A DNA stretch of 64,000 nt. It comes from Paraphysomonas bandaiensis (Eukaryota; Protista; Chrysophyceae). Under the pieces are notes generated by a model. That model searched no databases, had not been told where the DNA came from, and saw only the letters and a program-made list of their open reading frames with translations. This document shows, one piece after another, positions 16,494 through 38,700 of the stretch. The stretch spans positions 62,001 to 126,000 of the forward strand of contig CBFFRP010000125.1 in the NCBI GenBank assembly GCA_965644295.1, in the 5' to 3' direction. The translations under genes were made by a program, and so were the position numbers. Within the stretch, counting starts at the first letter, position 1, and each line of letters begins with the position of its first letter.

Positions 16494-17740
16494 CTACTTC
16501 TCGTTCGTCGAGCTTCGACTCTCCGGCCCCCTAAAAGGGGTTTTAAGTCTACATACAACATCCTCCAGGGCACTCAGACTTTCTCTTTGCTCTTTCACTT
16601 CATTCGATACCGCTGCTCGAAGCGAGGCAATCGACTCCAATAAATCGTTCATAGCTTCATCTTCCTTTGCAACACGAGGGAGACACATAGCTCTGCCAAT
16701 CGGAAAGTACGCTGTTGACTGATTCAATATTTGTTTTTGCATCCACCTCTCAATACCAGTGAGGTCGGTAGACTTCTTACTCTGTAAATACATCGAATAG
16801 AACAGATAATTCCATGTGAAATGATGCTCCTCAGTATGGTCTCTAAACTTCACCCTGTTTCTTTCAAATATCTCTCGTCCTTGTGAACATATAAAGCATC
16901 GATTCGATATATCATCCTCAATTGCATTTCTCTCACTTCTCAAATCGGCAAATGTATCAATAATAATACCAGTTATAATAGCTACCATAATGACAACAAT
17001 GAATATTTGATAGGTTATATCAAACACATACTTTTGTGCAGTATAATCTCCATAACTATTGAATAACGGCGATCCATTTAGCCCAAAATCTAAGTGCTGC
17101 CAAAACTTTGACGACAGAGTCAATGGAAATTCGTAATCAGTATCAGGGAAATTAGGAAACGTATATGTGTCGAAGCCAAACCCATATATACCAAGGACAG
17201 TATAAATCCAGCTTATTATGATACCCAACAACAAAGTTGTCAACACCTGATTCCCATTCACGACCACGGATTTCAAAACATACCCGAGCAGTTTTATGCG
17301 AACTGCAACATCCAGTACGTGGAAGCTGAAAAACGCCACAGAATATATATTTCCAAGAACAGAAGTTAAAAGGAAAGTGGCATAGTAAATAGTTTGAAAA
17401 TCCATAATCAAAAATATAATCGCCCAAACTTCATTCGGCAAAATTATGTCGCACAACTCATAAATAGATTCGACAGTTCTCGTAACATTCAAAACAATAG
17501 CCCCTGATCTTATATTCCGTTTCCAGCTCAACCCACGATTAACTGTAACCATGGCAGAACCCAGAGAAAAGTTGATTATTAGTAAGCATGACATCGCCAA
17601 GTGAAGCTTCATGAAAGGTTGTAAGTGACTGATATTAGAAACGCTAAGAAACTGGTTATCTCGACCATTTGATTGTTTTGATTCAAGGAGAATGGTTCCA
17701 TTGATATAAAACGTAAGACACATTGTTATCAAAACCCACC
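16494..17740 (-). other. IP3R/RyR-type 6-TM ion-transport domain, C2H2 zinc motif and C-terminal coiled coil of the giant channel
   Basis: TM1 'WWVLITMCLTFYINGTILL', TM4 'FFSFHVLDVAVR', TM5 'VLTTLLLGIIISWIYTVLGIYGF', TM6 'VFDITYQIFIVVIMVAIITGIIIDTF', then CFIC...HxxxxH. Confidence 0.92.
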
Positions 17741-20700
17741 AATGTTCTCTAGTCGTGATGAATTTGCAGATATGTTTGGTCCATAAATCTTCCAATATCC
17801 AGTCTTGAAAAATAATAACATCCCTAACTTGAATAGACTTATCGAGGAAATCGTCTAATCTCTCTTCAGGACTATCACGCGATACAGTCTCAATTGTCCA
17901 ATCCATTTCCTTCTTGACTAAAGGGTTATGTATTTGACGGTGACACGAAGCAGGAACAGGAAAATAAACGCGAGTGAGGTTGCCATTCTGTAATAAAATC
18001 TCAATAGAGGCGAAATACCGACGATATGAAGCTCCTTCCTTGTCACTTACAAGCGAAGTTGGCGATCGTTCAGTCCATGCCAAACTTTTCTCGACCCAAG
18101 CATTGTCGTGTTGCCTTAATTTATTTGCATCACTCAGGGATAACTCTGAGTTGGCTGCTACTTCTGCTAACGATACTGAACACACACTCTCCAAAAATTG
18201 GTAATATGCGAAAGCTGCTTGCAAGTTGTGCTGAGGAGTAAGTTCATCTTGAATTGCCCAGGCAAGTAGAAATAATTTTTTCGTATCCTCATCAATAGGT
18301 AGTTGCTCTGGAATAAACGAACTGTGGGCTGTAAATATAGACTCCAGCTTCGCGAGAAAAGGATTCGACACAGTCTTTTTACGTGGTATCGGTTTATCTG
18401 ATTTTTCGTGATGGTGTTCGGGGCCTGCACTGGGATCAAAATAATTCCCCGTGCTAGTGTGAATAATTGAATGAGGTACAGTTGAAAAATGACTAAACTT
18501 TCGGACCAAATCAGGATGGGTGGGCTCATACTTATTCGCCAGAAATTTCCTGATATGTCGATGGGGCTTCAGCACACTCCCTGCCCAGCAAAACTTAAAT
18601 CGAAACACCAGTAAATCCACAGGAATCTGCTGCAAAATTGTATCCGTTTCCAGTGGCAAATCTGTGTTGAAGATCGAAAACAGAACTCCCAACGAATTCG
18701 CTTCAATCTCACATAAGCGCTGATACATCTGCCATCGCGGATTCAAACCTATATCTTTTACTTTCACTGACAATTTGCCGAACCAGCGTGCATACTCCTC
18801 CAATTTTGGGAGTTTCGAGTCTCTGATCAGATCACTGAGAAGCTCAACAGACATGGGTGTTATAATTCTAAGCCAGTTGCATATAACTTGAACAATATTA
18901 TCATGCACAAGCTCACGTTGATTTCCAACATTTGGTCCCTGCTCATTATGTCATCGTAATTGTGTTTATTCGCATAAAATACCTGAGTCATATCTGTGAG
19001 TGTATTCAGTGCTTGTGCTGCAACATCAAGTATATAAAGTACTGATTCATCTATAAAGCTATCACAGCTAGGTATGTCCTCGAGCAATACACGAAGAAGC
19101 TTCACGGTATCCAACACAGCATTGAATTCTTCTTCGCTCCCGTCAGCGGCTACTTCCCGGAAATAATCTTGGGCCCTGCTGTATTGGCCATCTACATATA
19201 ATAATACGTAAAACAGAGGATACAAATACCCATATACAAAAACATACCACATGCCCTTTGAAGAAACAACAGGGTTTGGCCCGCAATGTATAATTCATTA
19301 AGTTGCTCCGTGCCACGATACGCAGAAATGTCACGACATAGAGCATGAACACGAATACCAATAGCTCGAGCCACATTTACGGGAGTTTTTCCCTCTTCGG
19401 CACCTTCAGCCTTCATAACATCAAGAAACATCTTCTGGACATTATACTCATCTCCACTCTCTTGTTGAGTAATTACACTTAGAAGAAGGAAATTGGCAAG
19501 GTGAAGCGTCTCTCTCTGTAGAGCAAGAGCGCAAGTAGTGTTTGCAAGCAAATGGCAACACAGCTTCACAGCCCCCAATTCTGCCAGTGATGCTTGCACA
19601 ATCAATAGAGTTGTGGATGCAACCTGACCCTTATACTCTTCTTCATCATCATCAAAAATCTCCTGTGCTGTCATTTCATTACTCATACTAAGAGTATCAG
19701 AATAATCCTTTGGAACTGAGAGTGCCAATGACCTCAACAGCTTCACGACTTGAATGACAAACCCAGGAATCTCACTGATGGCTTCTGGGCTCATTGCAGC
19801 TTCGATCAGCGCTTCTAAAGGTATGCGACCGTCAACTCCCTTCATAAGTATATCTTTCTGCAACGGATTGGCGGTGGGGTAAACTCTCCCTGACTTCCTC
19901 CTATTTATACTTTTCTTTCTGCGGCCAAGAGTGGACACTGCACTTGCACTGCTACTATTCCGTGCGGCCCACTTGTGTACCATGTTGTGCCAGCATTGTA
20001 CAATTGTTTTGTCATGGAATAACTCTGCTGTGCTAAGGTCTTGGAGCTGCTGCATAAGATCAGATGGAAGATGGCTGGGGGGTTTTCGCAGCCATGGTAC
20101 ACGCCGACAGGGTGTCTCCTGATCTTCTAGCTGAAGCGACCTGGCTTCAACCTTTGGAGAAATATCACCCTGTTTTTTGTCAGTTATACTATTTTCCACG
20201 TCCACTTCTTCAATTGGGTCATAGTATCCAACACCAAGATGCTTTAACCGTTCCAAACACATTTTTTTCAAACATATTCTTGTAGCGGCAATAGTTTGAC
20301 GATCCGTTATGGTGGAATCGTCATTGGAATCAGCGTATTGATCCGAGAAAAAGTCCATGTGTGAAATGAGACTTCTTGGTTCGCTGTTTACTAAAGTTAC
20401 ACGATAGTTCTGAGGTAAAGCCACCCCAAGAACAAAATAGCCATCCCGTGGCAATGCTAAATCCTTGTAAAACTCCCCATCGTTTAGGCAAAATACAACG
20501 AATCCACTGTCAAAATTACACGCACATGAAATTTTATCTCCAATTCGTAGCGCTCGGCAGCTATCCACCACTTCACCATTCGCAACTAAGTTAACCGGCT
20601 TAACATCGACGGTGCTAGAACAATAGAAACCCCACGTATGATTATATGATCGTTTATATGCATGTTGGTTAACATAGTCTAAATTAGCAACGATGAAACT

Positions 20701-23700
20701 GATATCAATACTTTCTCCAAAGGTTGCAGGGTGATCAGGACTATCCTCAATTAAAACTGTGGCCAAGCAAGTACTGCTGAGCAAAGAAAAAGCCACAGGA
20801 AACGTCTCTTTGTCAATAGGGTAGTATGCAGTCTTCAAGTCAGATGTGAATTCGATACGAGCATCAGATATAGATGGTTCCCATTCGGTAACTATTGATA
20901 TATTTTTATTGATTTCACAACTATTGCAGCGTGTCTTCCGCCTCTTTTCCAGCTCTACATACTTTGCAATTCTATCCTTAACCTCTTTCGACTCAATCAA
21001 TGCCTGCATAGGATGATTGTCCCTGTCATTATTTCCACCCCCAAGCACATGCACAAACCGGGATATGCCCCCTTTGGTATCTTCACCAAGAAATCCAATA
21101 TCCGCAAAGCGGTCTTCTTTGATATAACGCTCCAAGAAACGCTGGATATCATAACCATACGCCTGGCCCTCTATACAGAACATATCTTCTAGGACACCAC
21201 ACTGGTGAGTTACGGCATCCCACGAACATGTATCTGAATTCCATAACTGTGCCATCCCAGATGCTTCCTGGCTAAATTGATTCAGGACGCCCATACCATT
21301 GAATGCACTGGTAGTGAATGAAACTTGTCCCACATTTACTGCCACAGATTGACCCGGGGTGAATGAAAAAGCAGGACACAAGCCCCCACGACCTACCCAT
21401 GATATATCCAGAGTCTTAGTAAAAGCAGGACCCCTACTTTGGCCATCCATGAAATACTCAATCTTTCCTGTCCCCACATCCAATACGATTCCAACCACGG
21501 ACCCTTCCTTGAACTCCATTTTTTCAAAGGGTCTATTAGACATCATACCCTTACATAACTTGAAAGTGTTTATGGTTGAATCTACAACACCACTTAGAGC
21601 ATAAGAACCTAGCACGCTACCTATTCCCAAGCACACAGGAGATTCATTGCTCATATTAACTGCTTCGCTATGTTCAATATGTAATTCGTCGTCAGCAACA
21701 ATGCAACCAACTTGACTGTGAGATGCTGTGGTCGACTGTGATCCAAAAACGAACTCACAATATGCTTTCCCAAACAAAATTGGCATATCAATTCGAATTG
21801 ACTGAACCAAACTGGTGCGATTCTCGAAAAAGAAAAAAGTATCTTTCCCTATTGCCTCAGCTCGAATCTTTTTCTGGAGTTCTTCCTCGGGAGACGAAGC
21901 TGTAGCACAATCATAATCTTCCAGTTCAGCCAAACTCTGATCAAATACTATGGCCCTCCATCCCCACCCATTCTCTTTTGAAGCACACGAAAAACGAAAG
22001 AAAAAATGATCAGAAGACACACGAAGAGGTGGCATATCTCCGACACCTGGAAAATTCTTTCTTGATCCCAAGTTGTTACCAGAAAATCTCGACAAATTAT
22101 GATCTGGTCCTCCCTTCCACACAGCATCCGAAGATTGATTCACTCGAAACTCAATATAATTGTTGGTACCAGTTATAGCCGTCGACTTGTCAAAAATTAC
22201 CAACAAGCCATAAGCCCCAGGAATGGAGACCTCTTGACAATAGTTTGATGACTCTGTCAGTGGGTGGGTGCTTTCCAAAATAGTGTATTTCGACCGATCT
22301 CGAGAAAATACTTGAAATGGATCTTTCGGTGCAGCCGCAGATATAGCTGCAATTTTGTAGCCCCATACAAAGGGATGGTGTGTGCAATATTTTACATAAA
22401 CTGTCGACTTGGGAATTTTCAATGGCGAATCATGAGTAGGATAGACCATTGCGTTGCGCGATGTGAAAACGCACGAAGAAGAATCACATGAAGCATGTGT
22501 AAAAATACTAACAACACCAAATTTTCCTAATGGAGCATTGATACTGTTCATGACAGGATCAAATGCTACATGTAATCCACTTCCGTCAATATGTAAGGCA
22601 TTTACCTCTTCTATTTCGTCCGAAAAAAGCAGTCTTGTTGCTGGAATCCACATACTCTCATCACCTGTACTCTCAAGAACAGCACGTGCAGGGGCCTTCG
22701 AACCAATCATTGAACTTAAATCATTCGGCTCAATAGAAATATCTTGCCCTGGCGACAATGTTGCACCAGCGACGAAATCAGAACCGGAATTTTCAGGAAG
22801 CGTGAACCGACGTCGATAAACTTCTTTTAAGAATGTATAAATCACAACTATATCTACCCACCCTTCCGATATGTCACACTGCAACACCAATTTGTCTTGT
22901 CCACGGAGAGATGGAAGTCGTTGTCCAACAAGTTTGCCGCACTGGAAAGTTGCCAACGACAGGGAAGAAGTTCCGTGCGCATCCACTACAACTCCCCATG
23001 AGTTAGAAACCTTCCCAAACAGTTTCGACTTTGACTTTTGAAAAGTTGAGGACGCCATTCCAAAAGAAAACCCAGCAGTAGTGGGTAATGTAGACAGAGT
23101 GATCGCGAGTTGCCATTTCACTGTATCAACATTGCACAAACATGCAGGATTGCTCGTTCCTAATGACGATAGTCGTCGTGCAACTGTGTCCATTTCATAA
23201 AACTCCAGGCCTCGACTAGATATTTCTGGATTCCAAGTTCGCACATCAAGTGGGAAATAAGGATTAACATCGGCACTGGGCAGTAGTTTACAAAAAATGT
23301 TACCATCAATAGACTTCACTCCTACAGTGTTAACAATATACCCAATGGGCACAATATAATTCGAAGCTTCCGCAGTGCCGTTGTCGCTGACAGTATAAAC
23401 TATTTCAGTCTGAACAAGTCTAAAAGTATAATCGATATCAGCTTCATTAAGCAAATCTTCTTCGCCAAAATGACGAGATTGCACTACATTTTCCGACTTG
23501 AAACACATTTTATCAAACCCGACCAAAGGACTTCTCGCTGGACGTACAGCGAAGCGAAAGCAGAAGTCTCGTCCAGGCTCAAAATGATAATAATAGTAAA
23601 AAGACTTGGCAGGAATAAATAGGGGTTCATTTTTTCCTGTACCAGGCCAGTTACCGTCATCCCCTCGACCGGTGTACATTGCTTGTCCCCAAATATCACT

Positions 23701-26700
23701 GCGGCTATTATCCCTATAAAAAGTAATGTAAGATCCTCGACTTAACCTTGTCCCTTCCTCAAATACAACTTCTAACCCATCACACTCGATGCCCTCATCA
23801 TAAGCAACTTCTTCAAAAATATCACCACAAGAATTTTCAGCAACATGAAGGCTTTCATATACTCTCACATTCTCTCGATCTGAAAGAGACAATGAATCTT
23901 TGTATAAGGTGCTTGGGAACTTTCCTTTATTTGCAGAAAATTCTTCCTTCGACAACCCTTTCGCCATCATTTTCCAGCCCCACTTTGAAAAATGACCAAT
24001 GCTATGAAAATGAGCAATGAATTGATTCGATGGAACAAGCAATTCGTCACGAAACGAAGGAAAGCTCGACCCAATAAATTCCTTGGGGGTAAAAGTTGAA
24101 ATATCTTTTCTTCCACACTCGTCGCAGCGAAATATATTGTGATGAAACAGAGGGATCAGTAAATCTTTGTACTGAGAAGGCTCTGCAATTTCTCCAATAT
24201 AATTTCCATTTCCGTGGGGTTTGAAATCAATCCATTCTATTGATACCACGCGAAGTAGAGTTCCCACAGGAATAATATTGTCATTGCTCTCATTGCAACG
24301 AAAAAGCAGAAATTCCAAGTGTTCAATTTGTTTATCATTCATACTGCCTTTTCTTTTTCCGAGAATGTTTTTAGTTATGGCTTTCAGGCCCGCAGATCCT
24401 GAAACACAAAAATAATAGTCCTGTGAAGTCGATAGAGCAGGCAATAGGCGCACATAATCTACATCGTTGTTTACACTGTAGTCAGATAATTCCGTGTTCG
24501 ATGAAAACCACACCTTTACATGGTTATAATCTTCAATTTCCACCCGGAAAAAGAGATCTTGAGCGATGGGATCATACTTATGAGCGCTTTCGACAACATG
24601 TACACCATCGACAACACCATCCCCAGAGCAAAAAAATTTACGGACATCTTCAGCCAGTAAAGAGAAAAAGTCTTTCTGTATATCAGGTCGCAGTTGAACA
24701 TAATCAATGAACGTGGTAGCAAATTTGAGCCATGGCCGAAGTGTTTTCGCGCGTCCTTTATAGCCAAATGAATTTTCAGAAATTTTCAAAAAGAGTTCAA
24801 ACAGCCACTCAAACTCTTTAACATCGTTGCTGAAGTTGAATACGTATTTAGCATTGTCATCAAGGCACTTTGAAATCACATCAACGATTGCGACCGTAAA
24901 AGGAGACATTGCCTCTTTAAGTAATTCACTTGAGCATTGATCAGAGAGATTTAGTAGCAGTGGCATCACACTTTTGACATGAGTACAGAGGGCTTGTAGG
25001 GTAATGCTTTGTGTGAAGAGTAAATTTCGCCTCTGTAATTCGTTCAAATAATATTTAGTGGGGTACAATGGTAGCATATTGCTAATAATTTGTAATGAAG
25101 ATATAGCATCCCTAAAATTTTCATTAGCAACACACTTCTGAACGTCTTCTATGAGCTTATGCAAGAGTTTCGGGGCAACTGAATCATACATATTTTCCGA
25201 TGAAGCCGCATTAAGTAAATCACGAACGCCATATCGTTTTCCTAAGTGTCCTGCTAAAGTATATGTACAGTTGGAAGACGCAAGTTGCCTTCTATTTTCA
25301 TTGTTGTCCTTGCACCACGATGACAGCAACATACAACACGCTTCAAAAATACTGGCGAAAGAATCCACATGAGCAATCTCACTATGCTCCCACGCTTCTT
25401 CTTGCTGCAGAACATGTAGCACACTTTCAAGTAAACCCCAATTCGAAGACACTTGTTGTCGACGCCGTTGAGTGCGCAATATTGTCCATGGTAATGCCAA
25501 CTCAAACACATGATTGGAACCGAAGACAAATGACTGCTCAATGGCTGATCCTCTTGCGCATGCAGTAATTTGATACCCAGACCCATTATCACTTTTTTTT
25601 GCCCTGACGACACGATATAAGGCTCCACTGTTCTCTGACTCAGACCTCCAGTCAGGACCAACAGATAAAAACATATTCACTTCCGGTACAACACCTTCAG
25701 TGCGCCCATCAATTGCAAACCGAATCCTATGGATAGTTCGTTCTAGTTTTTGCTTCAATTGGGAGTTCGACATCAAATTTTCATCCAACACAACACTTCG
25801 AACTTCTTTCAAATCTCTCTGCAACAATCTGTAAAATGACTCATCGAAGTCGTCCTCAACAACACTTTGTACGTCAATTGAGGCATTTAATCTCTCCAGT
25901 GAGGTGTGCATCCGCACAAAGCACTTCATTGACGACTCAATCAAAGCAGGCACACCAGATACAGCCATTTGAATAGCAAGCCGACTAGGTGCGTAACCGT
26001 GATCCAGTATATGACTACCATTAAGCACGGACTGAAGTCTTGGAAATTGGACAGCGTATATGTCGTCGGACGATATTTCAACAGCGCAAACGTCAACTGC
26101 AACATCGCTATCGGATACTTCACGACTCACACTTTCGCGATAGTCGCTAAACATAGAGTCATCCCAAATTATCTCCACCTTATTACCATTTACAGCTTTT
26201 ACAAAGCCCTCACGGGCTCTCCTATCCGCTGACGGGTTCGTAAAGTGTAAAGTGCACTTCCTAGTGCACACACGAGTGCCTTCAGTAACAGCATATTCAG
26301 AAAGTGGAACATTGAATGAAATGCACCGAAAAACTTTATCAGGCATAGTCAAAGTCGAATTTTCGCGAAAGCTATATGATATCGCATCTCGGTGTATTGG
26401 TTCTTTAATTTTGCTGCCATCGTTGGAAACAACTTTCCGCACAGCAATCTTCATGCGCTCATATTCGCGCAATTGAATTTTGAGGTCTAAATCTATACAG
26501 AGCTCAAGTATCTCAACTACTTTTGTTCTCAACCGCACAATGCGTGATCTGCTGTGTGATATTCGTTCACTTTTCAATGCTGATCGCAAGCTAAACTTAC
26601 TAGAATACCGGCGTTCAAAAGATTTGGATGAATTTGCAGATCCCACAGACACGTTCGAGATAGATTTTAGCAGTGAATCGCGTAAATACTTGAAATTCGA

Positions 26701-29700
26701 AGCATCGTCATAATAGCCAGTTAAAATCATCCCCTTCAATAAATCTAAGAGTGAAAATGCCCTTGACACCTCCGGAGCCATATCATCATCGTAGTGTAAA
26801 ATATCATGAAGTGTATCGATACGCTCATATCCAGCTAAGTCGTCGCACAAAGACAGCCGGCGACCACTTCCAACAAACTCATTCATAAAGAGCAATAATT
26901 TGTCTTTATCAGTCGGGCCCAACGAACGTGCACCATTGTATGCATGTTCGACAGATATAGTTTCGTCACAAGAAATCATATCAATATTACATACATACAT
27001 ATGAAGCATTAAATCACAAAAAACTTGACTGTAATTTTTAATGTTGGCACAATCACTTCGATGAGGCCATAGCATACATGAGTACAACAGATCGAATGGC
27101 AGATACTCAGAAAATAGTTCACAGGCTTCGATATTTTTGTTTACGACAAGCCAATCCCACAGTCGAAACGAACTGTCCAAAAAGTTTCGAACATTAGTTC
27201 TCAACTCATAGCGATAAAATAACTCTAAACTCAACCACACATGCCCTTGTGTTCCTGTTGTTGCCGATATTTCTAAGCTGTCATTGACAAACCTGAACGA
27301 CAATAATCCGTTCCCTTTTGATTCTACATCACGCTCCCTTCTCTTCGCGTGATTTTGCGAAGACGCATTTCTAAAAAATATTTGTTTTATGATAAACATT
27401 TGGTCTTCTTCCCCACTGCATGACCTAAGGACGTGATTTTCTCGAATATAATCCAGTATGAGATTACTACCGTCAGCCACAGGAATAGAGAGCAGAGTCG
27501 TGACAGCGGGAATAAGGCAACAGTTTTTATATTCCAAAGCATTTCGCATAAAAAAATTATGTATGGACTTAGCATCCGACTGTGTCAATGCCCTCAGACT
27601 ACCGAAAATATAACTCCCTAAACTTTTCCAGCAAGAGCCTGCTAGAGACATCAATGAACGAATAACTGAAAAGTTTAATTCCGTGGAGCTATTCAGAAGC
27701 CGCAAACACACATCGACAAACTTGCGGCTAACTGGAGGTAAAAGAGAAGATATTGCATCATTCTTTGCCCAAAGGCTAATTATAGAGCACACTACAAAAA
27801 AAATCCTTTCCCAAATCGACTGATGTTGGAGAACTAACCATTTGATTTCATTGCTATCATTAAGTTTCATCGCAATGCACTCGAGAGTTTCTCTGACAAG
27901 CAAAACTGAGTCCATGAATCTTTCATCAATGGATTTCACATCTGAACGATTAACGTGAGTTTCAGCTTCCTGTACCATCAGTAACATCGCTTCCGAAATA
28001 CGATTCTGCAAAGCTTTAATGATATTGTGGTCATCGCCTTTCGACGAGGTAACAAGCTTGCAAAGAACCATAGCTGCTCCTTGTTGTAGTGCAATATTAT
28101 CACGTTCTTCATCTGTGATAAGATGACGACAAGTGGGAACTTTAGTTGTCGCAGTATCCACTAAAAACTTCAGTCCAGTTTGCACCAGTTGCTTCCGATT
28201 CGAAGGGTTTCGAGCCAAACTAAACAACGCAGCAGCAGCGTAGAACTTGATGAGTCGGTCAGAAGTACCGAGGCACATAATTAGTGGCTCAAAAACACCA
28301 TCTGAAGCCATTTTTTCCAAATTCTCAGAGTCAAAACATAGTTGCTGAATTATCCATGTACAGTGTCGACACGTGTCAATGTCAATTAGTTTCGACGAAT
28401 TATAAGTCAACTCGCAAACTTTCAACATGCTTTTCCACCATCCATCAGCAACCATGATAGCGGACGCACCTTTGCACTGTACAAACCTCGCCAAGGCAAG
28501 ACAACCCTGCCTTCGAATCGAAGCAGTTGTATTGCTGGCAAGTAAGCACGCCTCGCTAAGCCCAGCGCCTTGTCTATATAAAATATCGGTAGGCGCCGCT
28601 CCATCATTGGTGACAACAACAGTGCTATCCTGATTTATGTCCCTATGCGCGGATTTATTAAGTCTATCGGCATATAATTCAAAAGGCTTAGTGACTGATG
28701 CGATTTGTGCATACGCAATGGCGGCCCAACTCAATACGCTTTCATCTTCACTGTGAAGCATTGATAACAAGTGGTGGAGCCCCCCAGATTTTCGCGAATG
28801 ATTTAACTGAGGTAGCAAATACTGTATGTTACGCATTGTAAAGTCCTCAGAACCTAGAGTCCGAAAGAGTGGTCTAGCATGAAACTTGACTTCAGATTCC
28901 AGCGATGGTGAATCTAAAGAAACCATACCAGGGGACCCTGCGTGGTAACTATACCACACTCTGTCGCCTGGAATAGTTAAACGAGTTTCGGTAACTTTTC
29001 CGCGATGCTCAAAAGCCACATCATAGCCCTTGCAATCTGGACGCTCCTTATAAAAGGTTAGGACCTTTCCACTGTCGATATAGCAATGGGTATCGAAAAT
29101 TATTTCGATCTCGGTAGCCATATAAAAAAATATTCTTTTCATTTCAATATTCTGAGAGCATTGCGGAGAAATAACACTTTCAAACAGAGGATACTCGGCA
29201 ACCAAAGTTACCGAAAATCCTGGAGCGTCGATTGGTGCTTCTTCTGCAACGGCGGCAGGAGAAGCATATACTCTTGACATTGATTCAAACTTAAAATCAA
29301 TTGACAATTTATCCGTGTGATCAAACACAAATGTTCTATTTTTCTTCACAGCATCATCAATATCAGACTGGTGTATTCTGGTATTTGAAGGGTTAATAAT
29401 TATGACATCTTTTATTTCTTGACTGGACTCTTTTTCATGTGTATTAATTCTGCTGCAGACATGAAATGACATAGATATTCCAATAGCATGAGCAAACATT
29501 GCTTCGAAATGCATAGTATTCCCATTATTTGCAATCGCATAGTTCCCATTTGGAAAATTCTCTTCGTCAGTACACTTTACAATCGTGTTAATTAGCACTG
29601 GTTGGTAGTCTTTCATGTTGAAAGATGGCCTATGCCGTGAATAAACAAGACGAAACATCCAGGCAGCAATAAACGATTGAATAATAGAAGTGTCATCTGA

Positions 29701-32700
29701 ATCGAATGTTCGGTCGTGCATCCCAGTTATTAAATCAATAAGAGATCGCATATCAGGAATAATACTTTCGATTGCCACCCATGCCGCCGCACTTACCATT
29801 CCTGAAGTGCTGTCATTCGTTGCCCTGATAAGATCAACTATTGGGGGGCCGTTAATAATACGATCCCGGTAGCCCGAAGGACTCATATAAGTTGTACACT
29901 CAGGAGTATACCGAGCCAATTTTCCTACTGCAGATATTGCAGCAACTTTCGTACGTATATCAGTCGCCACAAGAAGTCGAAGCAATGCGGTGAACGAGTC
30001 GTTTTCGTAAGACGAGGTTTCCTCTGATGCAGAATCAGCCAATGGGAAAACATACAGGAGCAAACTGGTCCGCAACAACTGTTCAGATGATCGACCATTG
30101 AGTTCAACGTAAATGTTGTTTGTATGACCGGAGTAAATTTCACCTTGAAATATGCTTTTATCATTGGCTTCTAGCATAAATTTCGAAGTGCTTTCTGAAT
30201 CTTTTACATGGAGAGAAACATCATCATGCAAGGCGGATTTCTTATCCACCAAAACAGACACACCACAAGAATTATGAAACGACAATATATTATCGTATTT
30301 GTCGCGAACTACGCGGATTGAAGTATTGGGCAGCTCCAACTTTTCGGTACAACCAGTAGCACAATTGCGGGGGCCCCATTCCACAATTAAGTCCGAGGAA
30401 CTGACATGTATAATAACTCCACTGTGCCATTTGGAGGTATCCACAAATTTCATCATGTAATCATTGGTCTTAGTCACAATCATTCCAGTTTCATAGGGTC
30501 CCTCGTAATTTGGTAATGATGCAGCAAAGTCGGTACAAGTAATTCTTTCCAAATCACTTGTTGAATACAACATGGGGAAACTGTCACAGTCCTCAAATAT
30601 CACTTCAAAGCAAGAACCTGCTTTCGCCCATTCGTAATCATCACTAGCTATTTCATCCAACGCTATGGCTACCGCTCTACTGCAAATGACATCGTCAGCA
30701 CGAAGAAGCTGTAATAATGATCGCATTTTCCCACGAGCTACGAGCTCTGCACGAAATTTTTTTTCCATTGATAGAAGCCCAAGCAACTTTAACGTTTCGC
30801 TATCCAATGGAACCCTCTCAACGGTAAGAAGCCCCCGAGAGTCAGATTCGACCACCCAACCTCTATATTCATATGGAGATATCACTCGTAACTTTCGATA
30901 TTTATTGTTTGTCATAATACTTCTATCTACGATAATAATTTCCCCTTGGGGAATCGTTGTTTCTGGCTGTCCTTCGCACCCGTCAAGAGGAATCACGGAA
31001 AGTCCATTAGGCTGTATGACTTTATAACGCGAACTGCACATTAAATCGATAAGAGATTCTGCAGACCCAAAACCACTGCTGAATTCCCTCATAACTTTCT
31101 TGTTGCTCAATATCTGGCGCAAAGCTTTACATGCTGAAATCCTACTTCTTTCACTGCCACTTGATGCCAAAACTATGGAAAAATTGTCAGACAAGACGAA
31201 AAAAAGGGCAATAAAAACCTAAGAGTGGATCAACCCCATTGTCTTCCAAAATATCAATGCAGATTTGATCAGTGTCACCCAGCCCATCAGCTTCTCCGAT
31301 AACAGTTGCAGCGTATCCCCAATCCTCAACTCTCTCATCTGATGTAAATTTCCAATACAACCCACTCCCTTCAAAACGAATCGTGGGCCAATAACCAACG
31401 CCACATCCATGAAATTTCAACTGTCCTTCAGGACCGCATATCGGTATCTTATGATCCTTGTCCACAAAAAACTATAGCAGTATGTAAAAAAATAAATCTC
31501 AATTCTAGTTATGAACACCTCTAAGAAATCTCTATTCAATTGAGTGCTGCATCTCTCGTCAAAGACTATGGTGATTCTGGTAAAATGATCACCAAAAATA
31601 ATTTCACCAGACTCATCTGAAAATACATTACAAACTAACTTGTTAACATCAATGACATACCTGTGTTGGGTGCATAGTAGTGAGGCGATTGAATAAACTT
31701 GGACTCCGTGCAGGTGCGAATATTGTCCAAAGAAAACAAGTTAAAACATTTCACAATCCACAACGACAGATTAGGCAAATTCCTCTTCGGGACACTTAAT
31801 ACATCTGGTCTACTCTGCATAATGGCGACAAACCTTTGAGCAATTTCGACAAATGTATAAGGATCATTAGCCATCGTCTGTAGAATAAAATTACACGCAA
31901 CGTCAAACACACTACTTTATTATCATACCCAAACGGCAAGGGGGAGCTTTTCCCAGGACTGTGGATATTCCGGAATTGGAGAAAAAGGTTGAACCGGGTG
32001 CTTGAAAAACAACATCTCTTCATTACTCACTATTACAAGATCACTGTGTTCTTTCACAAAACTACCCCGAAGAAATTCAGAATCGATAATCTCAGCAGGA
32101 ATATGAAGATTCGCGATGCATGTCTCCGCCCAAAAAAATGCTGGGCCCAGATCTAATCCATCGGACGAAGTTGGCATCAACGCAAGTAAGCGAAACATAA
32201 CATCTAAATGAACCATCACTAATCGACCAACATTTGTGGCAGAAATAGTGGCCAAAGTTTCCAAGTGAGAGACAAATTCCTCGTCTGGAGGCTTCAGATC
32301 ACCATACGCTTCAATTTCATCCATAATGCGCTCCACTATCCTGGCAACACCGTCCACTTTTAGTACAGATTTCAACAGACTCCCACCATTTTCATGAACT
32401 TGAGCAACGGAAAAGAGTATGTTCAAGGTCATATTCTGCATGACTTTGTCAGTACTGTCAGCGTAGCGCCGCAATGAGTCAAAGATGTCGCTCACTTTCA
32501 TCAGACTGCTTCCAACAACAGATAACGCCTTGAGATGAAATGGTCTGCGTATCAAAAACTGTTGAATGTCCTCACTGGAAACAATCTCTTTAGACCAAAT
32601 TAAGTCGGCAATCCAATAATGCGAGTCTGGGTATTTCGATGCACCAAAAGTGCAAGGCATAACTCCTATACCAACTGGGCTGCTGTTACTCACAATTATA

Positions 32701-35700
32701 TCATCCACTGAAACAGCTTTGTCATGAACTCCGTTGATGACATAAGTCACAGTGTTTCTTGGAACATCAACCGTAACGACACAATGCGTCCATCGTTTCG
32801 CCATCAAGCATGCGTTGGAACATATTTTTTTTACTATAATTTCGCCGTTGCTCTTTTTAATTGGAACATCGATGCATAATCGCATCGACGGTTGCAGTGC
32901 ACAAAAAAATCCAGATTCCCCATTAATGGGCAGGAATTCATTTTTACCGTAATTCACATGTGACCATTCTTTTGTGTTCATGTTGTAATACTTCAGACTA
33001 TATGCTAATGATCCATCCATGGTACCATCAGCAAATATTTTGTCCACTGCTGTACATGCTGCTGCATAACCTACAGGAATTGATTGAAATGGTTTCTGAC
33101 CAAGATTTAATACCACAGTTTGCCCGGCACCAATTGTTATAGCGGGGTAAAAACCGCTGTCCCTATACCATGCATTACAATATTATTTCACATAAATTAG
33201 TACCTTACCAACTTGGGCCGTATCTGCCTTCTTTCATTCCTTCGTCGGGATCTGGTCGGTTTCCATGAGCTATCTCAGTAAAAGCCGTGCCCAGAGGAGA
33301 ACCATTCAGTGTAAAAGACATAACTCCACTTTCGAAGTCCAGCAAGGCACCAACAACATCGCTGGCCTTGATCGGGGTTGTCAAGTTTCCATAAGGTTGC
33401 GATCCGTCACCACAAAACAACGAGAACTTCTTCTGGCATCTGCAACTCAGGAGTGAACACAGCTAGTATTGCACATACACGCAACTTACTTGGAAGGAAA
33501 GTAAGAATAACTGCAGTCATCACAACCTACAAATATACTAGTTGATTCATCAACTAAAGATATTTCAGGGAATGATTTCGAAGCCCAACCAATCTGCAAT
33601 TACAGAACTCCCCATCAAACTTACTCAACTACAATCAATCGACACTTACCATGCAGTCGCTTCCATCGGATTCAAAAGTGACTTCATAATAAACTTTTCC
33701 ATTTCTCAGTAAATGGTCATTCAAGTATGTCCTGCTATGTCTTTTGGAATGTAATCTTCCCTCGAAAGGGCCTTTGAAGAAGACGGGAAGTCCATCCCGA
33801 TTAATGTAGCCATTCGGCAATGCCCAAAATGAAACACTAAACGACTCCACAACAGGTTCTTGCTCCTTCAGTCTCTTGCGCTGAGATTTCATACGACTCA
33901 TAGCTGCCTGAGAGAGGCCTCTTGAGCTCATGTTTACTCGCTTCAAAGGGGGGGTCGGTGTGCACGGTGTTGTCGGATAAGCATCGCTGTTGGGCTGTAG
34001 ATGATCATATGATGATGAAACATCCAACCACAGAGCTGGCATACAACCAGTCACTTCCAACGATTTATTGTACAAACTCATAGCACGACCATCAGCAATC
34101 ACTGAGTACGCAACATCGGAAATATCGCATCGAGCTTTTTCGCACAATTTCTGAAGTAAAGTCAGCGCACCTCTCGCTTCGTCTTCACTTTCATTTATCA
34201 TGGAAAACAAACGATTCATACAAGAGTCGTCTGATGATATCGTCCCATAAAAGTCATCAAACGCTTGAGGAATGTCTAAAAAGTCTGTTATTCCGTTTTC
34301 AGTATCGAGAAGTGTATCCAATGAGTGCACAACTTGCAAAGCAGCCTGTTTTAATATTCCAGTCGTCATACTTCTTTTCAGTATCGGTATAGCATCGTCA
34401 ATGAATCTCGCACGCGCATTTTCCTCATGATCTCGAACAGATTCCCGGACAGTCTCAGAATCCAACAGAGACGGAATCAGCTCCAGTACAAGCATGGCTG
34501 AATCAGCGTCATCTGATTGAAGAAAGCACGCCAAAACATCCTCAATTCTACCATTTTCTATTCCCAAATGCGCCCGTAAAAATAACAGTGCAAAGTCCTG
34601 AATTTCTGGGTTGGGATTCGTAAGAAGTCTTATAAAAATAGTTACACATCCATTCTCTTTAATAAATTTGAGAGAAGTTTTACTCGGAGAATTGTTATCA
34701 GTTGAAGATAGAAGCATGTTCAAGGTTGTAATAACTACATCATCTGAGCCTGTTAGTAACAAACTTTCAAACCATTTCAAACCATACTTCTCGACAACAT
34801 CATTTCTTAGCTTAGATGAGCGTGCCACATTGGCCAATACCAAGCCAGCTGCAGAGCATGTTTTGCTTTGAACTAAACTTGTACAAGAGTTAAATAACGC
34901 AGGCGTTGACACCAACTCTCTAACAATATCGTGGGACATAGAGTTTACATTCTTGAAATGCGGTTTTACTTTCATTAAGAAACCCCAATACTTCTTCTTC
35001 ACTTCCTCGGAAGAAAACTTAACATAAACCCTATCCTGGGGAACGGTAACATCGTTCCAGTTTCCGGGGTCTGTATACTTACCACTAAACATTGCCGGCA
35101 TAGGCTTTCGGTGCAACTCACTTTCATACATGACGTACTCTTCGTCCCGCATTTGCTGCGTCAAAAACAGGTGTAAGAGATCGCTGTCACGTTCCGTTTC
35201 ACATCTACTATCAAACGTTATCGATAGTGATTCAGCATGTGGGAATGAAATCGATGCTTCAAGTGTATACTCTTCGCAATAACTACCGTCGACTCGCTCA
35301 GTCTCTAAAACTCTAACAATAGCTTTTCTAGGATCATTGTCACGTGTTAAAATGTATAATAATTCAGCAAAATTTTCACGCAAAGTAGACTGATGCTTTG
35401 ACATTGTAATACTGTCGAGTCCTTCTCGAAAAACACTTCTTCCAATTGTCCGGCACACCCCAACATCATTCATGTCGTGTACAGGCCTCACACCGACTCG
35501 AAATCCCCAATCTTCAGAAGATAGGTCTGTACGAAAGAGTAATATGCATGAGTTAAGATCAAATACAACAGGGCAATCCACATAAGGGAAATTGCTTTCC
35601 TCGCACGACCCAGTAAAACTAATCAGTGAGTAACTCATGCGAGATGTAGTAATGACGTCAAGGAAAGCAGATCCATGTCCTAAACTGGACCTCCTATCAA

Positions 35701-38700
35701 ACGCGAGTTCAATGGCAACAGCTCCCGGAAAGTCGACTTGATATATCTTTTTGGCTAGTTTTCCGTATGGGTGCGTACTCTCATATATTTCTCCACAGTC
35801 GCCGATCCATTCAACAAGATCATCAGTAAATGGAGCAACTACAAGTTTAAAACGCCCTTCATTCAAAGCATCAACAGGATGATCGATATCTAGCCACATG
35901 TTGGGTTTGGATAAAATCACTGGGGGGTATCCATCTATTCCGGGAAAATGCCGCCTTCCGGCAGTACAAGAATAAGCACCTACAAGACGATCATCATCTT
36001 CAGAGCTGGCATATCGCTTGTTGGGCAGCCCGCTATACACCTTGACAACATAAGAAGGATCTTCATTGTCACATCCAGTTTCCTCTTCATGAAAGCAAAG
36101 TTGAAGCATTTGAGTGCCACGAAACCTTACCCTTATACGTCCGTCTTTTCCAGGAAAATCAGTTGAAGAAGACAGAATCTTTGCTCCCTCAATAGATGCC
36201 AGTCGATCAAAGATGGAGCGTCTTTGAAATCCACGTATATTGAGGGGATACGCAACGAAACGCCAACCCCATAAGGAGTCTATATCATTGAATTCAGTGA
36301 TAAACAAATAATAAAATTCGTCAGCAGGAATAATTAATGGGTCATTTATATTAGTCGGAAAATTCGCAGGAGAAATACCTCCTGCACCCTGTTGACCACC
36401 ACCATACCTCCATGTACCGTTCACGACCAACTTTGACATCGACGGAATATCATTGATTGAAGGGTGCCTTTCTCCAGAGAAGGTCGGGCCCATTTCTTCG
36501 TTCCCGTGATCATATCGCATAACGTAGTCTTCATATTTGTCGTGAGACTTCAAGAACAACACTGCATCCTGAAAATCTCGACGATTATTGCCCGTTTCCG
36601 GATACATTCGCGTTTCTGACCTGGGATCGAATACAACAGCGATGGCCGAAGCTCCAGGGAAACTAATCTTATTCATCATGGAGAAAGTTTTTTCGCCACG
36701 ATTTAGTTGACATGGATGTGAAGTTTCAATGACAACATGATCCTTACTTGCGGATATCACGTCGTGCAATGGATCTGGGGGTGGATCTACAGGGAAAACG
36801 GAAAATTCGAAACCCCATTGAGGAGTAGCATTCGCAATTGCAATGTTGTACCATAACGATCTGCGACGTGCTTTGGAAATAAAATCCAACTTCCTATCGT
36901 TCAAACATATCAGTAAAGGGTCCACACCGTTTACCCCAGGGATATTGTCAGGATGTCCAATAGAATAAGATACGGGCGTCTTGTTACGGTTTTGTGACAA
37001 GCTAGGATTATCCAAATAAAACACCAAACGAGACCCCTCTGGAAATCGTGTCTTGGGGTTGAAAGCAACGCAACAGTACTCTGTTGGAGCATCCATAATA
37101 ACTTCATGAACTTCATCTATACCTACACGACATGGGTGTATGCTACCTTTGATCTTTGCGCCTTCCATATTCATATACTCGCCGTATTTTGTAAATGAGG
37201 TATCGACGATTCCATATGCAATCAGTCGATAGCCCCAAAACGTAATATCTTCATCGGCAGTAAATTCAATCCACACTCTGTTGTATGGAAAAATCAAGGG
37301 CGATGAAAATCCGGGACATGATTCTGAATACATTCCACTCAATTTATCAGAAATTTGTGCAGCCAACTTGCCCTTTTCGTCCAGTAGTGCCGGGTTTTGG
37401 GAGTAAAATACCACATAGTCGAAGCATTCCTCCGTAATTGTGGATGGGTCAAATTCAATATGAATACCGCTGTAACCCGGGAAATGTATTTCATGAACGT
37501 TTTCGGTACCCCCCTTATACGGATGACTTGATTCCAACAATATATATTTCTTATCATCATCCACATCAAAACCAGCCTGATTGACAAAATATTGATACAT
37601 GAAATCCATAATTGTTTTTCGATCTGAAAAACTTGTACATAAGCCATCATATAATTCAGGCTTTTCTTTACATTTTTCGAAAAGAAGTGCCATGACATGA
37701 CAATCTTCGAATACTGTCATGTGAAAATCGCCATTTTCAATAACTTTTAAAAGTGTTTTTGATGCCCATCGACTGGTGTCAGGATCTGCGCTATGCAGTA
37801 GATTCATACAAACTTTTACGTGTTCGAGCTTACGAGGACACGCACCATACAGCCCCCTAGCAACTTGTCGCTTATGGTTCACTAAAACACGGGTCCTTGA
37901 CGCCTGAAACTCTCTCTTAGATATAAATAAACCGTCAGAGTCAACAACAGGTCGATACCCATCTGCACTGCTACCGCCATAAACTTTCCAACATATCCGT
38001 TGCCAAGCACTTAAACGACCCAAATGCACAGGCTTTGATTCATGGCGTATTACTTCTAGAAACGAAACCACCCGAAAAGTAGGTGGCGTGTAAAGAAAAT
38101 CCTTCTGTCCAAAGTTAAAACGGAGAGGGTTAGTTGTTTCGCGTCCAATATACACCGCTGGTTGAAACCCACATGCCCACAAATCTGACTCGCCATGTCT
38201 TCTTCCTTCAAAACAGGGACCCTTCATCACGGAATGACCATTGACATATATGTGTATTCGAAAATGAATGAGATCTAAGTGAAAACCAACTACGTCACCC
38301 GGTTTTAGAGGAGGTATTTTTAATTGTACCGTTGATGTGTACCATTTCAACTCTCGCTTACCAAGGTCAAAAATAAAATCGAATTGTGAAACCTCTTCAC
38401 CAAAATGTGACTTTCCCGTCATGCTTGGAGCCAAATAATCCGACTTTAACCTTGTACTTTGAGGAATCGTCAAACCAATGCATACATTGGAAACTGATTC
38501 GCAAACGACCTCAAAAAATAGAGCACTTCGATATTGCGGTGACGGAATGGCAATTGGAATGGCAACAAGGTCAGCACACACACTCTTCGATTCAGTGGAA
38601 GTGTTGCACACATCGAAGAGAGAAAATGGTGTCGCAGATTCGCTTTGCAAAATTTCCAATAATTTTGGAAGACCACGACTAATAAGTTCTTCGCGAATCT

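What the first reader, a model, noticed from the sequence alone, without database searches (positions are those of the whole stretch)
17030..17200. Non-canonical selectivity filter: 'FWQHLDFGLNGSPLF' in place of GLRxGGG(I/V)GD
Seen: between TM5 and TM6 the pore helix ends '...TLSSKFWQHLDFGLNGSPLFNSYGDY', while TM6, the gate region 'GIIIDTFADLR' and the C2H2 motif are well conserved. Known: GGGIGD/GGGVGD forms the RyR/IP3R filter, and its Asp affects Ca2+ selectivity and conductance. The luminal Cys pair typical of IP3R is also absent here. Inference: altered ion selectivity or conductance, possibly not a Ca2+-preferring channel.
Basis: partly seen in the sequence, partly recalled or inferred. 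Interest (0 to 1): 0.8.

Follow-up and report, generated by a model that had tools for sequence, protein, structure and literature searches.

The report
Giant RyR-like channel, alternative pore filter
A marine protist encodes a roughly 9,500-residue relative of the ryanodine/IP3 receptor calcium-release channels whose ion-selecting pore loop is built from a different, strongly conserved motif, and that motif marks a deep, apparently undescribed branch of the family whose ion selectivity has never been measured.

Summary
On the minus strand, codons at 17061-17105 read FWQHLDFGLNGSPLF. AlphaFold2 and alignments to solved RyR/IP3R chains place it at the pore helix and filter, where those channels carry GGG(I/V)GD. 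TM6, the GIIIDTFADLR gate and the C2H2 zinc finger are conserved, and the luminal loop has no cysteine.

It is not an assembly error. Independent DNA and spliced RNA contigs from several studies carry the same sequence.

It is not decaying. Eleven related sequences (31-59% identical) keep LD[FY]GL-x-G[SP]P[LIV][FW], and the filter is better conserved (0.75) than the protein overall (0.51).

A library-wide search shows about a third of the nearest channel domains share a D[YF]G-x-R-x-[PA]P-x-[WF] loop. With the pore-loop columns removed, they still form one side of a branch (SH-aLRT 99.4) against canonical RyR/IP3R types. Named members come from dinoflagellates, a ciliate, Rhizaria, a euglenid, Diphylleia, Rhodelphis and a choanoflagellate.

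The gene runs from 45508 to 16494 with 11 short introns and encodes about 9,487 residues.

Altered permeation is plausible but untested. The conserved acidic cytosolic vestibule and the apparently retained Ca2+-activation triad favour a working, Ca2+-gated cation channel.

The parts
16494..45508 (-). Whole gene as modelled: ATG at 45508 to TAG at 16494, 12 exons, 11 GT-AG introns of 44-56 nt, one ORF of 9,487 aa. The N-terminus and 9 of the introns are predicted, not verified.
   Evidence: One search gives a single stop-free ORF. One search shows coding conservation across all frame breaks, and orthologue ORFs P0002 and P0003 are continuous over model residues 3953-8673. P0290, a single 7,139-aa ORF, is colinear with model residues 2170-9332; the spliced X8 contig is 26,594 nt long.
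16494..18938 (-). Last exon: end of the core solenoid, S1-S6 channel domain, C-terminal domain and coiled tail.
18939..18982 (-). Intron of 44 nt, verified.
   Evidence: Skipped in the X11 and X8 contigs and in L016, present in the DNA contig X5.
19192..19247 (-). Intron of 56 nt, verified. It splits the codons of the ACDGQ motif, which aligns with RyR1 Glu3893.
17178..17255 (-). S5 helix (residues 552-577 of the 804-aa ORF).
   Evidence: AF2 helix 552-577 and the alignment to RyR.
17118..17177 (-). Luminal S5-P loop GFDTYTFPNFPDTDYEFPLT. It is acidic and has no cysteine.
   Evidence: D591 is kept in all 12 family rows.
17076..17117 (-). Pore helix LSSKFWQHLDFGLN. D607 (17088..17090) is the clade's hallmark Asp, two residues before the conserved Gly.
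   Evidence: AF2 helix 598-611. D607 is kept in 11 of 12 family rows and in most members of the wider clade.
17052..17075 (-). Putative selectivity filter GSPLFNSY (residues 612-619), in place of GGG(I/V)GD(E).
   Evidence: G612, P614 and Y619 are kept in all 12 family rows. Mean identity is 0.75 over residues 611-619, against 0.51 for the whole ORF.
16902..17039 (-). S6 and gate (AQKYVFDITYQ...ITGIIIDTFADLRSERN...), with G647, I650, D651 and D655.
   Evidence: (identity 0.86).
16821..16898 (-). C2H2 zinc finger CFIC...H....H (C671, C674, H691, H696).
   Evidence: Alignment to RyR and IP3R and the invariant-column list.
16767..16769 (-). T714, aligned with RyR1 Thr5001 of the cytosolic Ca2+-activation site.
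   Evidence: Alignments. The site is defined in PMC5715910.
18873..19290 (-). RIH-associated domain (approximate bounds, spanning both verified introns). It contains ACDGQ and LTDMTQGP, which align with RyR1 Glu3893 and Glu3967/Gln3970.
   Evidence: Pfam PF08454 scores 50.6 bits against a cut-off of 28.5 on the spliced protein P0009. Alignment to RyR2.
21325..21576 (-). SPRY domain.
   Evidence: Pfam PF00622 scores 33.8 bits against a cut-off of 26.3.
25093..25479 (-). Weak RIH-domain match.
   Evidence: Pfam PF01365 scores 20.2 bits, below the cut-off of 22.3.

Best explanation
Positions 17052-17117 encode the pore helix and selectivity filter of an expressed, selectively maintained channel of the RyR/IP3R superfamily.

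The channel belongs to a deep second branch of that superfamily. In this branch the glycine-rich GGG(I/V)GD filter is replaced by a proline- and aromatic-containing loop: consensus D[YF]G-x-R-x-[PA]P-x-[WF], here LDFGL-N-GSPLF. The loop from the pore helix to S6 is about 6-7 residues shorter. The acidic residue that follows the canonical filter (RyR1 D4899) is not conserved. A nearly invariant Asp (D607) sits instead at the C-terminal end of the pore helix.

Inferred mechanism: four subunits form a cation-conducting pore. The S6 gate and the acidic cytosolic vestibule work as in RyR/IP3R. Opening is probably controlled by cytosolic Ca2+ through a site retained as Asp/Asp/Thr. The narrow part has a different geometry and charge pattern, so conductance and divalent-versus-monovalent preference probably differ from RyR/IP3R. 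My working guess is that Ca2+ still permeates.

Shown: the sequence is real, it is transcribed and spliced, it is conserved, it sits in this clade, the fold is RyR/IP3R-like, and the gene is very large (the exact structure is a model). Inferred: tetramer formation, conduction, Ca2+ gating and any change in selectivity.
For: Family and fold:
- RyR and IP3R3 at E 1e-36 to 1e-42, with S5, S6, the gate and the zinc finger aligned.
- All top Foldseek hits are RyR1/2/3 and IP3R3.
- RIH_assoc scores above Pfam's cut-off.
- AF2 places the pore helix at residues 598-611, coil at 612-623 and S6 from 624.

The sequence is real and expressed:
- It appears in an independent DNA contig and in spliced RNA contigs from several studies, including marine poly(A) metatranscriptomes.
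- Between strains there are 10 synonymous and 1 non-synonymous difference in 4,203 coding bases. None changes the channel domain.

Constraint:
- The motif is kept in the 11 related sequences aligned (31-59% identical).
- G612, P614 and Y619 are kept in all 12 family rows.
- Filter identity is 0.75, against 0.32 for the loop just after it and 0.51 overall.

Clade:
- Of the 120 best cluster representatives that carry a pore, about 43 have this loop type and 62 a canonical-like one.
- With the pore-loop columns removed, 37 rows form one side of a branch at SH-aLRT 99.4.
- Named members span many eukaryotic groups.

Cation pore and Ca2+ site:
- D651 and D655 align with RyR1 D4938 and E4942.
- D, D, Q and T714 align with RyR1 Glu3893, Glu3967, Gln3970 and Thr5001 (residue roles from PMC5715910).
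Against: - No functional data exist for any member of the clade, so conduction, selectivity and gating are inferred only from homology.
- The filter stretch has pLDDT below 50 in the monomer model.
- The residue-to-residue correspondence with GGGIGD is ambiguous. HMMER places a 5-residue gap, MAFFT a 1-residue gap, and anchoring on the clade's GLR gives no gap.
- The tree was made with a quick search and is unrooted. 'One side of a branch' is a clade only if the root lies on the other side.
- Only the best 150 of 3,939 hits were seen, so the clade's size and its boundary with 'other' filter types are rough.
- In this genome every one of the 12 detected paralogues departs from the textbook GGG(I/V)GD. 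Filter drift is therefore common in this lineage and need not signal a special function.
Confidence: 0.7

Rival explanations
1. One reading: the altered filter has abolished Ca2+ preference or permeability. The protein would then be a monovalent-cation (K+/Na+) channel or another kind of channel, not a Ca2+-release channel.
For: - The GGG backbone-carbonyl filter is gone, and the position aligned with RyR1 D4899 is not conserved as acidic (S, E, Q, D and others).
- RyR1 D4899 and E4900 are critical for permeation and selectivity (PMC5715910).
- A bulky Phe/Trp and an invariant Pro lie within the loop.
Against: - The alignment in this stretch is ambiguous.
- A conserved Asp (D607) and several acidic luminal residues (D589, D591, E593) could supply the negative charge.
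- RyR selectivity is attributed to charge density rather than to a tight binding site (PMC5715910).
- A retained Ca2+-activation triad fits, but does not prove, a role in Ca2+ signalling.
- There are no measurements.
Confidence: 0.22
2. The pore no longer conducts. The protein is a giant scaffold or sensor that keeps a channel-like fold.
For: The canonical filter is lost. The cytosolic part is enormous (about 8,900 residues), with SPRY, Arm and Laminin_G-like modules.
Against: S6 (identity 0.86), the gate residues, the pore helix and the filter are the best-conserved parts of the aligned C-terminal exon. The loop motif persists across very distant lineages. That pattern is hard to explain without a selected function of the pore itself.
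Confidence: 0.06
3. The loop is an assembly or sequencing artefact, or the gene is a decaying pseudogene.
For: None found.
Against: - The coding sequence is identical in an independent DNA contig and in RNA contigs from separate studies.
- The mRNA is spliced.
- The strain differences are 10 synonymous and 1 non-synonymous.
- The modelled ORF of 28.4 kb has no stop codon.
- The motif is conserved in relatives.
Confidence: 0.01

Closest known systems
Ryanodine receptors (RyR1-3)
   Same: - Channel-domain sequence and fold (E 1e-36 to 1e-42; Foldseek E 1e-13).
- S6 gate G-x-I-I-D-x-F and the C2H2 zinc finger.
- RIH_assoc and SPRY domains.
- Residues aligned with the Glu3893/Glu3967/Thr5001 Ca2+ site are kept as D/D/T.
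- A very large cytosolic assembly.
   Different: - No GGGIGD filter, and no conserved acidic pair after the filter.
- No luminal cysteine pair.
- The P-loop-to-S6 linker is about 6 residues shorter.
- No Pfam match to the RyR repeat, RR_TM4-6, MIR or the N-terminal domain.
- Almost twice the length (about 9,487 aa against about 5,000 aa).
- It falls on the other side of the main split in the channel-domain tree.
IP3 receptors (ITPR1-3) and protist IP3R homologues
   Same: The S6/gate sequence is IP3R-like (IIDTFADLRSE), and the CTD zinc finger and RIH_assoc are present. Oomycete and parasite homologues are likewise large tetrameric-channel candidates (PMC7399828, PMC3194816).
   Different: No IP3-binding core or MIR domains were detected. 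The filter is not GGGVGD, nor the GGGLG(G/S) variant described for oomycetes.
Paramecium Ca2+-release channels (CRC groups III, V, VI)
   Same: Published precedent that protist RyR/IP3R-like channels can depart from GGG(V/I)GD. CRC-VI shows 'practically no similarity' in this region, and in CRC-V the distance from pore to TMD6 is shortened. The authors left their permeation properties open (PMC3213138). A ciliate (Protocruzia) has a member of the clade described here.
   Different: I could not compare sequences, because no Paramecium CRC sequence was in hand. That paper does not describe a conserved P-P-[WF] loop shared across eukaryotic groups. Paramecium CRCs are also not reported at this size.
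CNG-type filters (T-I-G-E-T-P-P-P); an analogy from memory, not tested
   Same: A P-loop in which the short filter is followed by prolines, and where an acidic residue near the end of the pore helix governs cation and Ca2+ interaction in a non-selective cation channel.
   Different: It is a different channel family with no detectable sequence relationship in the loop. The resemblance is offered only as a guide to how such a filter could work.

Membership tests
RyR/IP3R superfamily (channel domain) | Six-TM channel domain with S5-P-S6 homologous to RyR/IP3R. | tested here: met
   phmmer against PDB chains gives E 1e-36 to 1e-42 over about 250 residues. The top 50 Foldseek hits listed are all RyR or IP3R.
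RyR/IP3R superfamily (channel domain) | S6 gate motif (G-x-I-I-D-x-F-x-x-L-R) and a cytosolic acidic vestibule. | tested here: met
   GIIIDTFADLR is present. G647, I649, I650, D651, T652, F653, L656 and R657 are invariant in 13 sequences.
RyR/IP3R superfamily (channel domain) | C-terminal C2H2 zinc finger. | tested here: met
   CFIC...H....H aligns with the RyR and IP3R zinc fingers. C671, C674 and H691 are invariant and H696 nearly so.
RyR/IP3R superfamily (channel domain) | RIH-associated domain. | tested here: met
   PF08454 scores 50.6 bits against a cut-off of 28.5 on the spliced protein.
RyR/IP3R superfamily (channel domain) | RIH domain(s). | tested here: inconclusive
   PF01365 scores 20.2 bits, below the cut-off of 22.3.
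RyR/IP3R superfamily (channel domain) | GGG(I/V)GD selectivity filter. | tested here: not met
   GSPLFN(S) occupies that place.
Ryanodine receptor sensu stricto | RyR repeat domains, RR_TM4-6, and N-terminal Ins145_P3_rec/MIR domains. | tested here: not met
   No Pfam match even at E up to 5 on the two large ORFs, and none at E up to 0.01 on the spliced C-terminal part. SPRY is present. Strong divergence could hide such domains.
IP3 receptor sensu stricto | IP3-binding core (Ins145_P3_rec plus MIR). | tested here: not met
   No Pfam match. Remote homology was not tested by structure.
Unnamed 'D[YF]G-x-R-x-[PA]P-x-[WF]' branch of the superfamily (defined here) | Asp two residues before the conserved Gly at the end of the pore helix, Pro at filter position 3, an aromatic residue at position 5, and a short P-to-S6 linker. 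| tested here: met
   D607, P614 and F616 are present. There are 20 residues from G609 to F629, against 26-27 in RyR1 and IP3R. The window gene has N611 where most members have Arg.
Unnamed 'D[YF]G-x-R-x-[PA]P-x-[WF]' branch of the superfamily (defined here) | Placement with that group in a channel-domain tree built without the pore-loop columns. | tested here: met
   37 rows against 72, SH-aLRT 99.4. The window gene sits in a starred 9-row sub-branch. The tree is a quick search and is unrooted.

The most novel reading that the evidence does not exclude
The RyR/IP3R superfamily has a second, very old branch, possibly dating to near the last eukaryotic common ancestor. It has its own filter architecture (Pro- and aromatic-containing loop, acidic residue moved to the pore helix, shortened luminal linker) and a distinct ion selectivity or conductance. 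One of its lineages evolved subunits of about 9,500 residues, which would make a tetramer of about 4 MDa. By my recollection that is larger than any ion-channel subunit described so far.
Probability: 0.45. Interest if true: 0.8.

Novelty: new variant of a known kind. Interest (0 to 1): 0.66.

Why it matters
The GGG(I/V)GD loop is treated as the signature of intracellular Ca2+-release channels, and surveys of protist genomes use it to decide whether a homologue is likely to conduct Ca2+ (PMC3194816, PMC7399828).

A second, constrained filter type shared by many eukaryotic groups has two consequences. A sizeable part of the superfamily has unknown permeation properties. It also provides a natural experiment on how this pore selects ions. 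The question is directly testable by expressing the C-terminal channel portion and swapping or mutating the loop.

The size of the gene (about 9,500 codons, with SPRY-, Arm- and lectin-like modules ahead of the channel) raises the question of what such a cytosolic assembly senses. It also shows that ORF-based gene calls split these channels into pieces that surveys can miss.

Tried and rejected
- **Assembly error:** rejected. DNA contig X5 and RNA contigs X11, X8 and X12 agree.
- **Decay:** rejected.
- **A 13-nt 'insertion' in transcript contig L016 relative to the window:** it is a run of N from scaffolding, not biology.
- **Greedy intron builder and fewest-introns search:** both mis-placed the two introns already known from RNA. 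The final model uses homology-guided boundaries. Nine of its introns remain predictions.
- **Direct test of an upstream splice junction:** a 24-mer spanning the predicted junction 33650|33593, and a 26-mer from the exon beside it, were both absent from metagenome contigs.
- **Naming the organism:** failed. Named relatives of the neighbouring mitochondrial phosphate carrier reach only about 65-67% identity (a cryptophyte, a chrysophyte, an ochromonad). Atlas neighbours of the pore domain are haptophyte, oomycete and perkinsozoan clusters. Run names were coded. Diatoms are unlikely because they are reported to lack IP3R-type channels (PMC11085791).
- **Literature:** no description found of a P-P-[WF] type filter. 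The library is incomplete, so this is not proof.
- **Neighbouring + strand gene (46573..53742):** a weak RIH match, but it is an Arm-like repeat protein without a pore.
- **Complex prediction:** not run. A homotetramer verdict would not bear on selectivity, and no coordinates are returned.
Full report
**1. The observation**

ORF 16494..18908 on the minus strand (804 aa) contains ...EFPLTLSSKFWQHLDFGLNGSPLFNSYGDYTAQKYVFDITYQIFIVVIMVAIITGIIIDTFADLRSERNAIEDDISNRCFICSQGREIFERNRVKFRDHTEEHH....

phmmer against all solved chains gives RyR1/2/3 and IP3R1/2/3 at E 1e-28 to 1e-36, and 1e-42 with the spliced 1,400-aa form. S5, S6, the gate and the zinc finger align. The only disruption is where RyR has VGVRAGGGIGDE.

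An AlphaFold2 model built on 13 aligned sequences has mean pLDDT 67. It shows:
- S5 at residues 552-577
- a helix at 598-611 (LSSKFWQHLDFGLN), which is the pore helix
- twelve coil residues at 612-623 (GSPLFNSYGDYT)
- S6 from residue 624

The top 50 Foldseek matches listed are all RyR or IP3R chains, with E about 1e-13. The motif therefore sits where the filter should be. The S5-P loop has no cysteine.

**2. The sequence is real and expressed**

Twenty public runs from twelve studies hold the stretch, eight of them recorded as RNA. I laid four runs on 16494-19300:
- An independent 46-kb DNA contig (X5) covers the whole stretch with both introns present.
- Contigs of X11 and X8 skip 18939-18982 (44 nt) and 19192-19247 (56 nt), so they derive from RNA.
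- A marine poly(A) metatranscriptome (X12) covers most of the exon.

A JGI transcript contig (L016) is spliced the same way and encodes a 1,400-aa product, P0009.

Between this strain and the window there are 11 differences in 4,203 coding bases. Ten are synonymous. The one replacement, S170P, lies in a disordered stretch.

**3. Constraint**

The word-index search with the 804-aa exon found 14 relatives besides the window's own transcript. Thirteen are 43-59% identical unnamed environmental or JGI sequences. The fourteenth, P0023, is a more distant canonical IP3R-like protein. A more distant relative (P0004) and two loci (L013, L015) were added.

Every relative whose sequence reaches the pore keeps the motif:
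- HLDFGL-NGSPL[FW]N.Y
- HLDFGL-SGPPLFNQY
- HLDFGL-RGPPIFNEY
- QLDYGL-RGPPVFDEY
- FLTFGI-GGSPIFVEY

The outgroup P0023 has GLRNGGGIGD.

Mean identity to the window residue, over the window ORF and the 11 relatives aligned with it (31-59% identical, outgroup excluded):

| Region | Identity |
|---|---|
| Filter (611-619) | 0.75 |
| S6 | 0.86 |
| Loop just after the filter | 0.32 |
| C-terminal tail | 0.24 |
| Whole ORF | 0.51 |

G612, P614 and Y619 are kept in all 12 of these rows. G612 is invariant even with the outgroup included. The second refutation condition (an unconstrained, degenerating loop) is not met.

**4. The motif marks a deep branch, not just this gene**

I ran the library-wide HMMER search because the question was how far this filter type extends. 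It gave 3,939 hits at E up to 1e-3. Of the best 150 cluster representatives, 120 include the pore:
- 62 have a canonical-like G-G-G-[IVL]-[GA]-[DE] loop, including vertebrate RyRs.
- About 43 have D[YF]G-x-R-x-[PA]P-x-[WF], for example HLDYGFRSAPVW, HLDYGLRGPPVF and HIDFGMRAGPIW.
- About 15 have other loops.

I built a maximum-likelihood tree of 109 channel domains. It separates the loop types with 8 changes, against a shuffled mean of 41. When the 68 alignment columns covering the pore helix, filter and linker are removed, 35 rows of this type plus 2 nested derivatives form one side of a branch. That branch has SH-aLRT 99.4 against the 72 others. The tree is a quick search and is unrooted.

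Named members:
- Polarella glacialis and Oxyrrhis marina (dinoflagellates)
- Protocruzia adherens (ciliate)
- Paulinella chromatophora and Muranothrix gubernata (Rhizaria)
- Platysulcus tardus (stramenopile)
- Ploeotia vitrea (euglenid)
- Diphylleia rotans
- Rhodelphis marinus
- Salpingoeca kvevrii (choanoflagellate)

Their only annotation is automatic: 'RyR/IP3R Homology associated domain-containing protein'.

The window gene lies in a starred 9-row sub-branch. All of its members come from unnamed assemblies. In this sub-branch the Arg of GLR is often replaced (N, S, G) and the two luminal cysteines, present in many other members, are lost.

**5. How the loop compares with GGGIGD**

The tools disagree on the gap. 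HMMER places five residues and MAFFT one. Anchoring on the clade's conserved G-L-R gives an ungapped match:

| This gene | RyR1 |
|---|---|
| G609-L610-N611 | G-V-R4892 |
| G612 | A4893 |
| S613-P614-L615 | G4894-G4896 |
| F616 | I4897 |
| N617 | G4898 |
| S618 | D4899 |

Under any of these alignments three things hold:
- The glycine triplet is gone.
- The position matching D4899 varies across the clade (S, E, Q, D, T and others).
- The distance from the Gly of GLR to the [FY]D of S6 is 19-20 residues, instead of 26-27.

RyR1 D4899 and E4900 on the luminal side, and D4938 and D4945 on the cytosolic side, are reported as critical for permeation and selectivity, with PCa/PK about 7-8 (PMC5715910). 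In this gene D651 (matching D4938) and D655 (matching E4942) are kept, and S658 is as in IP3R. On the luminal side the clade has a nearly invariant Asp, D607, two residues before the Gly at the end of the pore helix. Canonical channels have Asn or Tyr there.

My inference is that this Asp supplies the negative ring, and that the Pro/aromatic loop gives a differently shaped and probably shorter filter. From memory, this recalls the CNG-type G-E-T-P-P-P loop. That is an analogy only.

**6. Gating**

In the alignment to RyR2, mapped onto RyR1 numbering (PMC5715910):

| RyR1 Ca2+-activation site | This gene |
|---|---|
| Glu3893 | Asp in FLQRAC-D-GQ |
| His3895 | Gln |
| Glu3967 | Asp in TLT-D-MTQGP |
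| Gln3970 | Gln |
| Thr5001 | T714 |

Relatives keep an acidic residue at the Glu3967-aligned position, in P0002, L015 and P0004. Activation by cytosolic Ca2+ is therefore plausible, but it is an inference. No IP3-binding core, MIR domain or RyR repeat was detected by Pfam.

**7.

The 804-aa exon follows a 70-codon exon and a 4,000-codon ORF (19192..31194). That ORF carries SPRY, Arm and a weak RIH match.

Upstream, translated-sequence (tblastx) matches to the orthologous loci run on without interruption through 31,200-34,000. The frame breaks there coincide with short GT...AG segments. In orthologues P0002 and P0003 the same region is one uninterrupted ORF.

With 11 introns of 44-56 nt, mostly GTAAGT...CAG or TAG, the stretch from the ATG at 45508 to the stop at 16494 becomes a single ORF of 9,487 codons.

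Independent support:
- The spliced X8 contig is 26,594 nt long and would reach about position 43,550.
- P0290 is a single 7,139-aa ORF from a 403-kb environmental contig. It is colinear with model residues 2170-9332, that is, from the upstream part through to S6.

Nine introns and the start codon are unverified. Two scans for a junction-spanning word and for an exon word found nothing, possibly because near-identical records are withheld.

**8. Context in this genome**

The 62.6-Mb assembly holds at least 12 genes with this channel domain. Their loops read PGGIGD (two genes), GGGIAD, NGTGD, EGLGQ, EGIGR, EGIAY, RSGDF (two genes), AGDVAE and NPPEW. None is the textbook motif. One of them, L010 (DYGLVNPPEW, with S6 ...AIISGLIIDTF), looks like a second member of the branch described here.

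Filter diversification is thus common in this organism. That tempers the surprise of any single departure from the canonical motif.

The organism could not be named. It is a marine planktonic protist with 41% G+C and very short introns.

**9. Comparison with what is known**

Published surveys treat GGGXGD as the family's filter (PMC3194816) and list GGGIGD or GGGLG(G/S) for oomycetes (PMC7399828).

The clearest precedent is Paramecium. Most of its CRCs keep only a core or a variant of the motif, CRC-VI shows 'practically no similarity', and CRC-V has a shortened pore-to-TMD6 distance. The authors left the permeation properties open (PMC3213138).

I found no paper describing a conserved P-P-[WF] loop shared across eukaryotic groups, or a subunit of this size. 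The paper library is incomplete, so this absence is weak evidence.

**10. Verdict**

The gene is a member of the RyR/IP3R superfamily by its channel domain, RIH_assoc and zinc finger. By the features tested it is neither a RyR nor an IP3R in the strict sense. It belongs to a deep, apparently undescribed branch with its own pore loop.

I rate it a new variant of a known kind, with interest 0.66.

Noticed in passing
window 16494-45508 (-): The channel domain is the C-terminal tenth of a modelled 9,487-aa protein (12 exons, introns of 44-56 nt). The gene had been read as several separate giant ORFs. A relative has a single 7,139-aa ORF that is colinear with it.
   Followed up: partly
G000 loci L002-L012 (contigs C152, C46, C238, C324, C288, C426, C409, C182, C395, C144, C363): At least 11 further RyR/IP3R-like channel genes occur in the same genome. 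None has the textbook GGG(I/V)GD loop (PGGIGD, GGGIAD, NGTGD, EGLGQ, EGIGR, EGIAY, RSGDF, AGDVAE, NPPEW). L010 looks like a second member of the P-P-[WF] branch. L012 lacks the CxxC of the zinc finger.
   Followed up: partly
window 46573-53742 (+): A large gene transcribed divergently from the giant channel gene, built of repeated Arm-like units of about 350 residues (...LSVLRQLPYSLEDIERVGEGGGCDLLYLVILRHA...). It has a sub-threshold RIH match (21.4 bits) and no pore domain.
   Followed up: partly
window 14986-16026 (+) and 56721-57671 (+); 9424-10914 (-): Two mitochondrial-carrier genes and a CorA-like Mg2+ transporter gene flank the channel gene. The first carrier is a phosphate carrier, whose named relatives reach about 65-67% identity (a cryptophyte, a chrysophyte, an ochromonad).
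   Followed up: partly
L013 1-6000, L015 1-6000, L014 1-3100: Orthologous loci from environmental assemblies show the same layout. A giant upstream coding region (3,700+ codons, with a weak Laminin_G_3 match in L015) runs into the channel gene with only very short interruptions. The giant architecture is therefore conserved in the sub-branch.
   Followed up: partly
L016 604-616: The JGI transcript contig contains a run of 10 N plus a 3-base duplication. This splits its gene call and is a scaffolding artefact, not a frameshift in the gene.
   Followed up: yes
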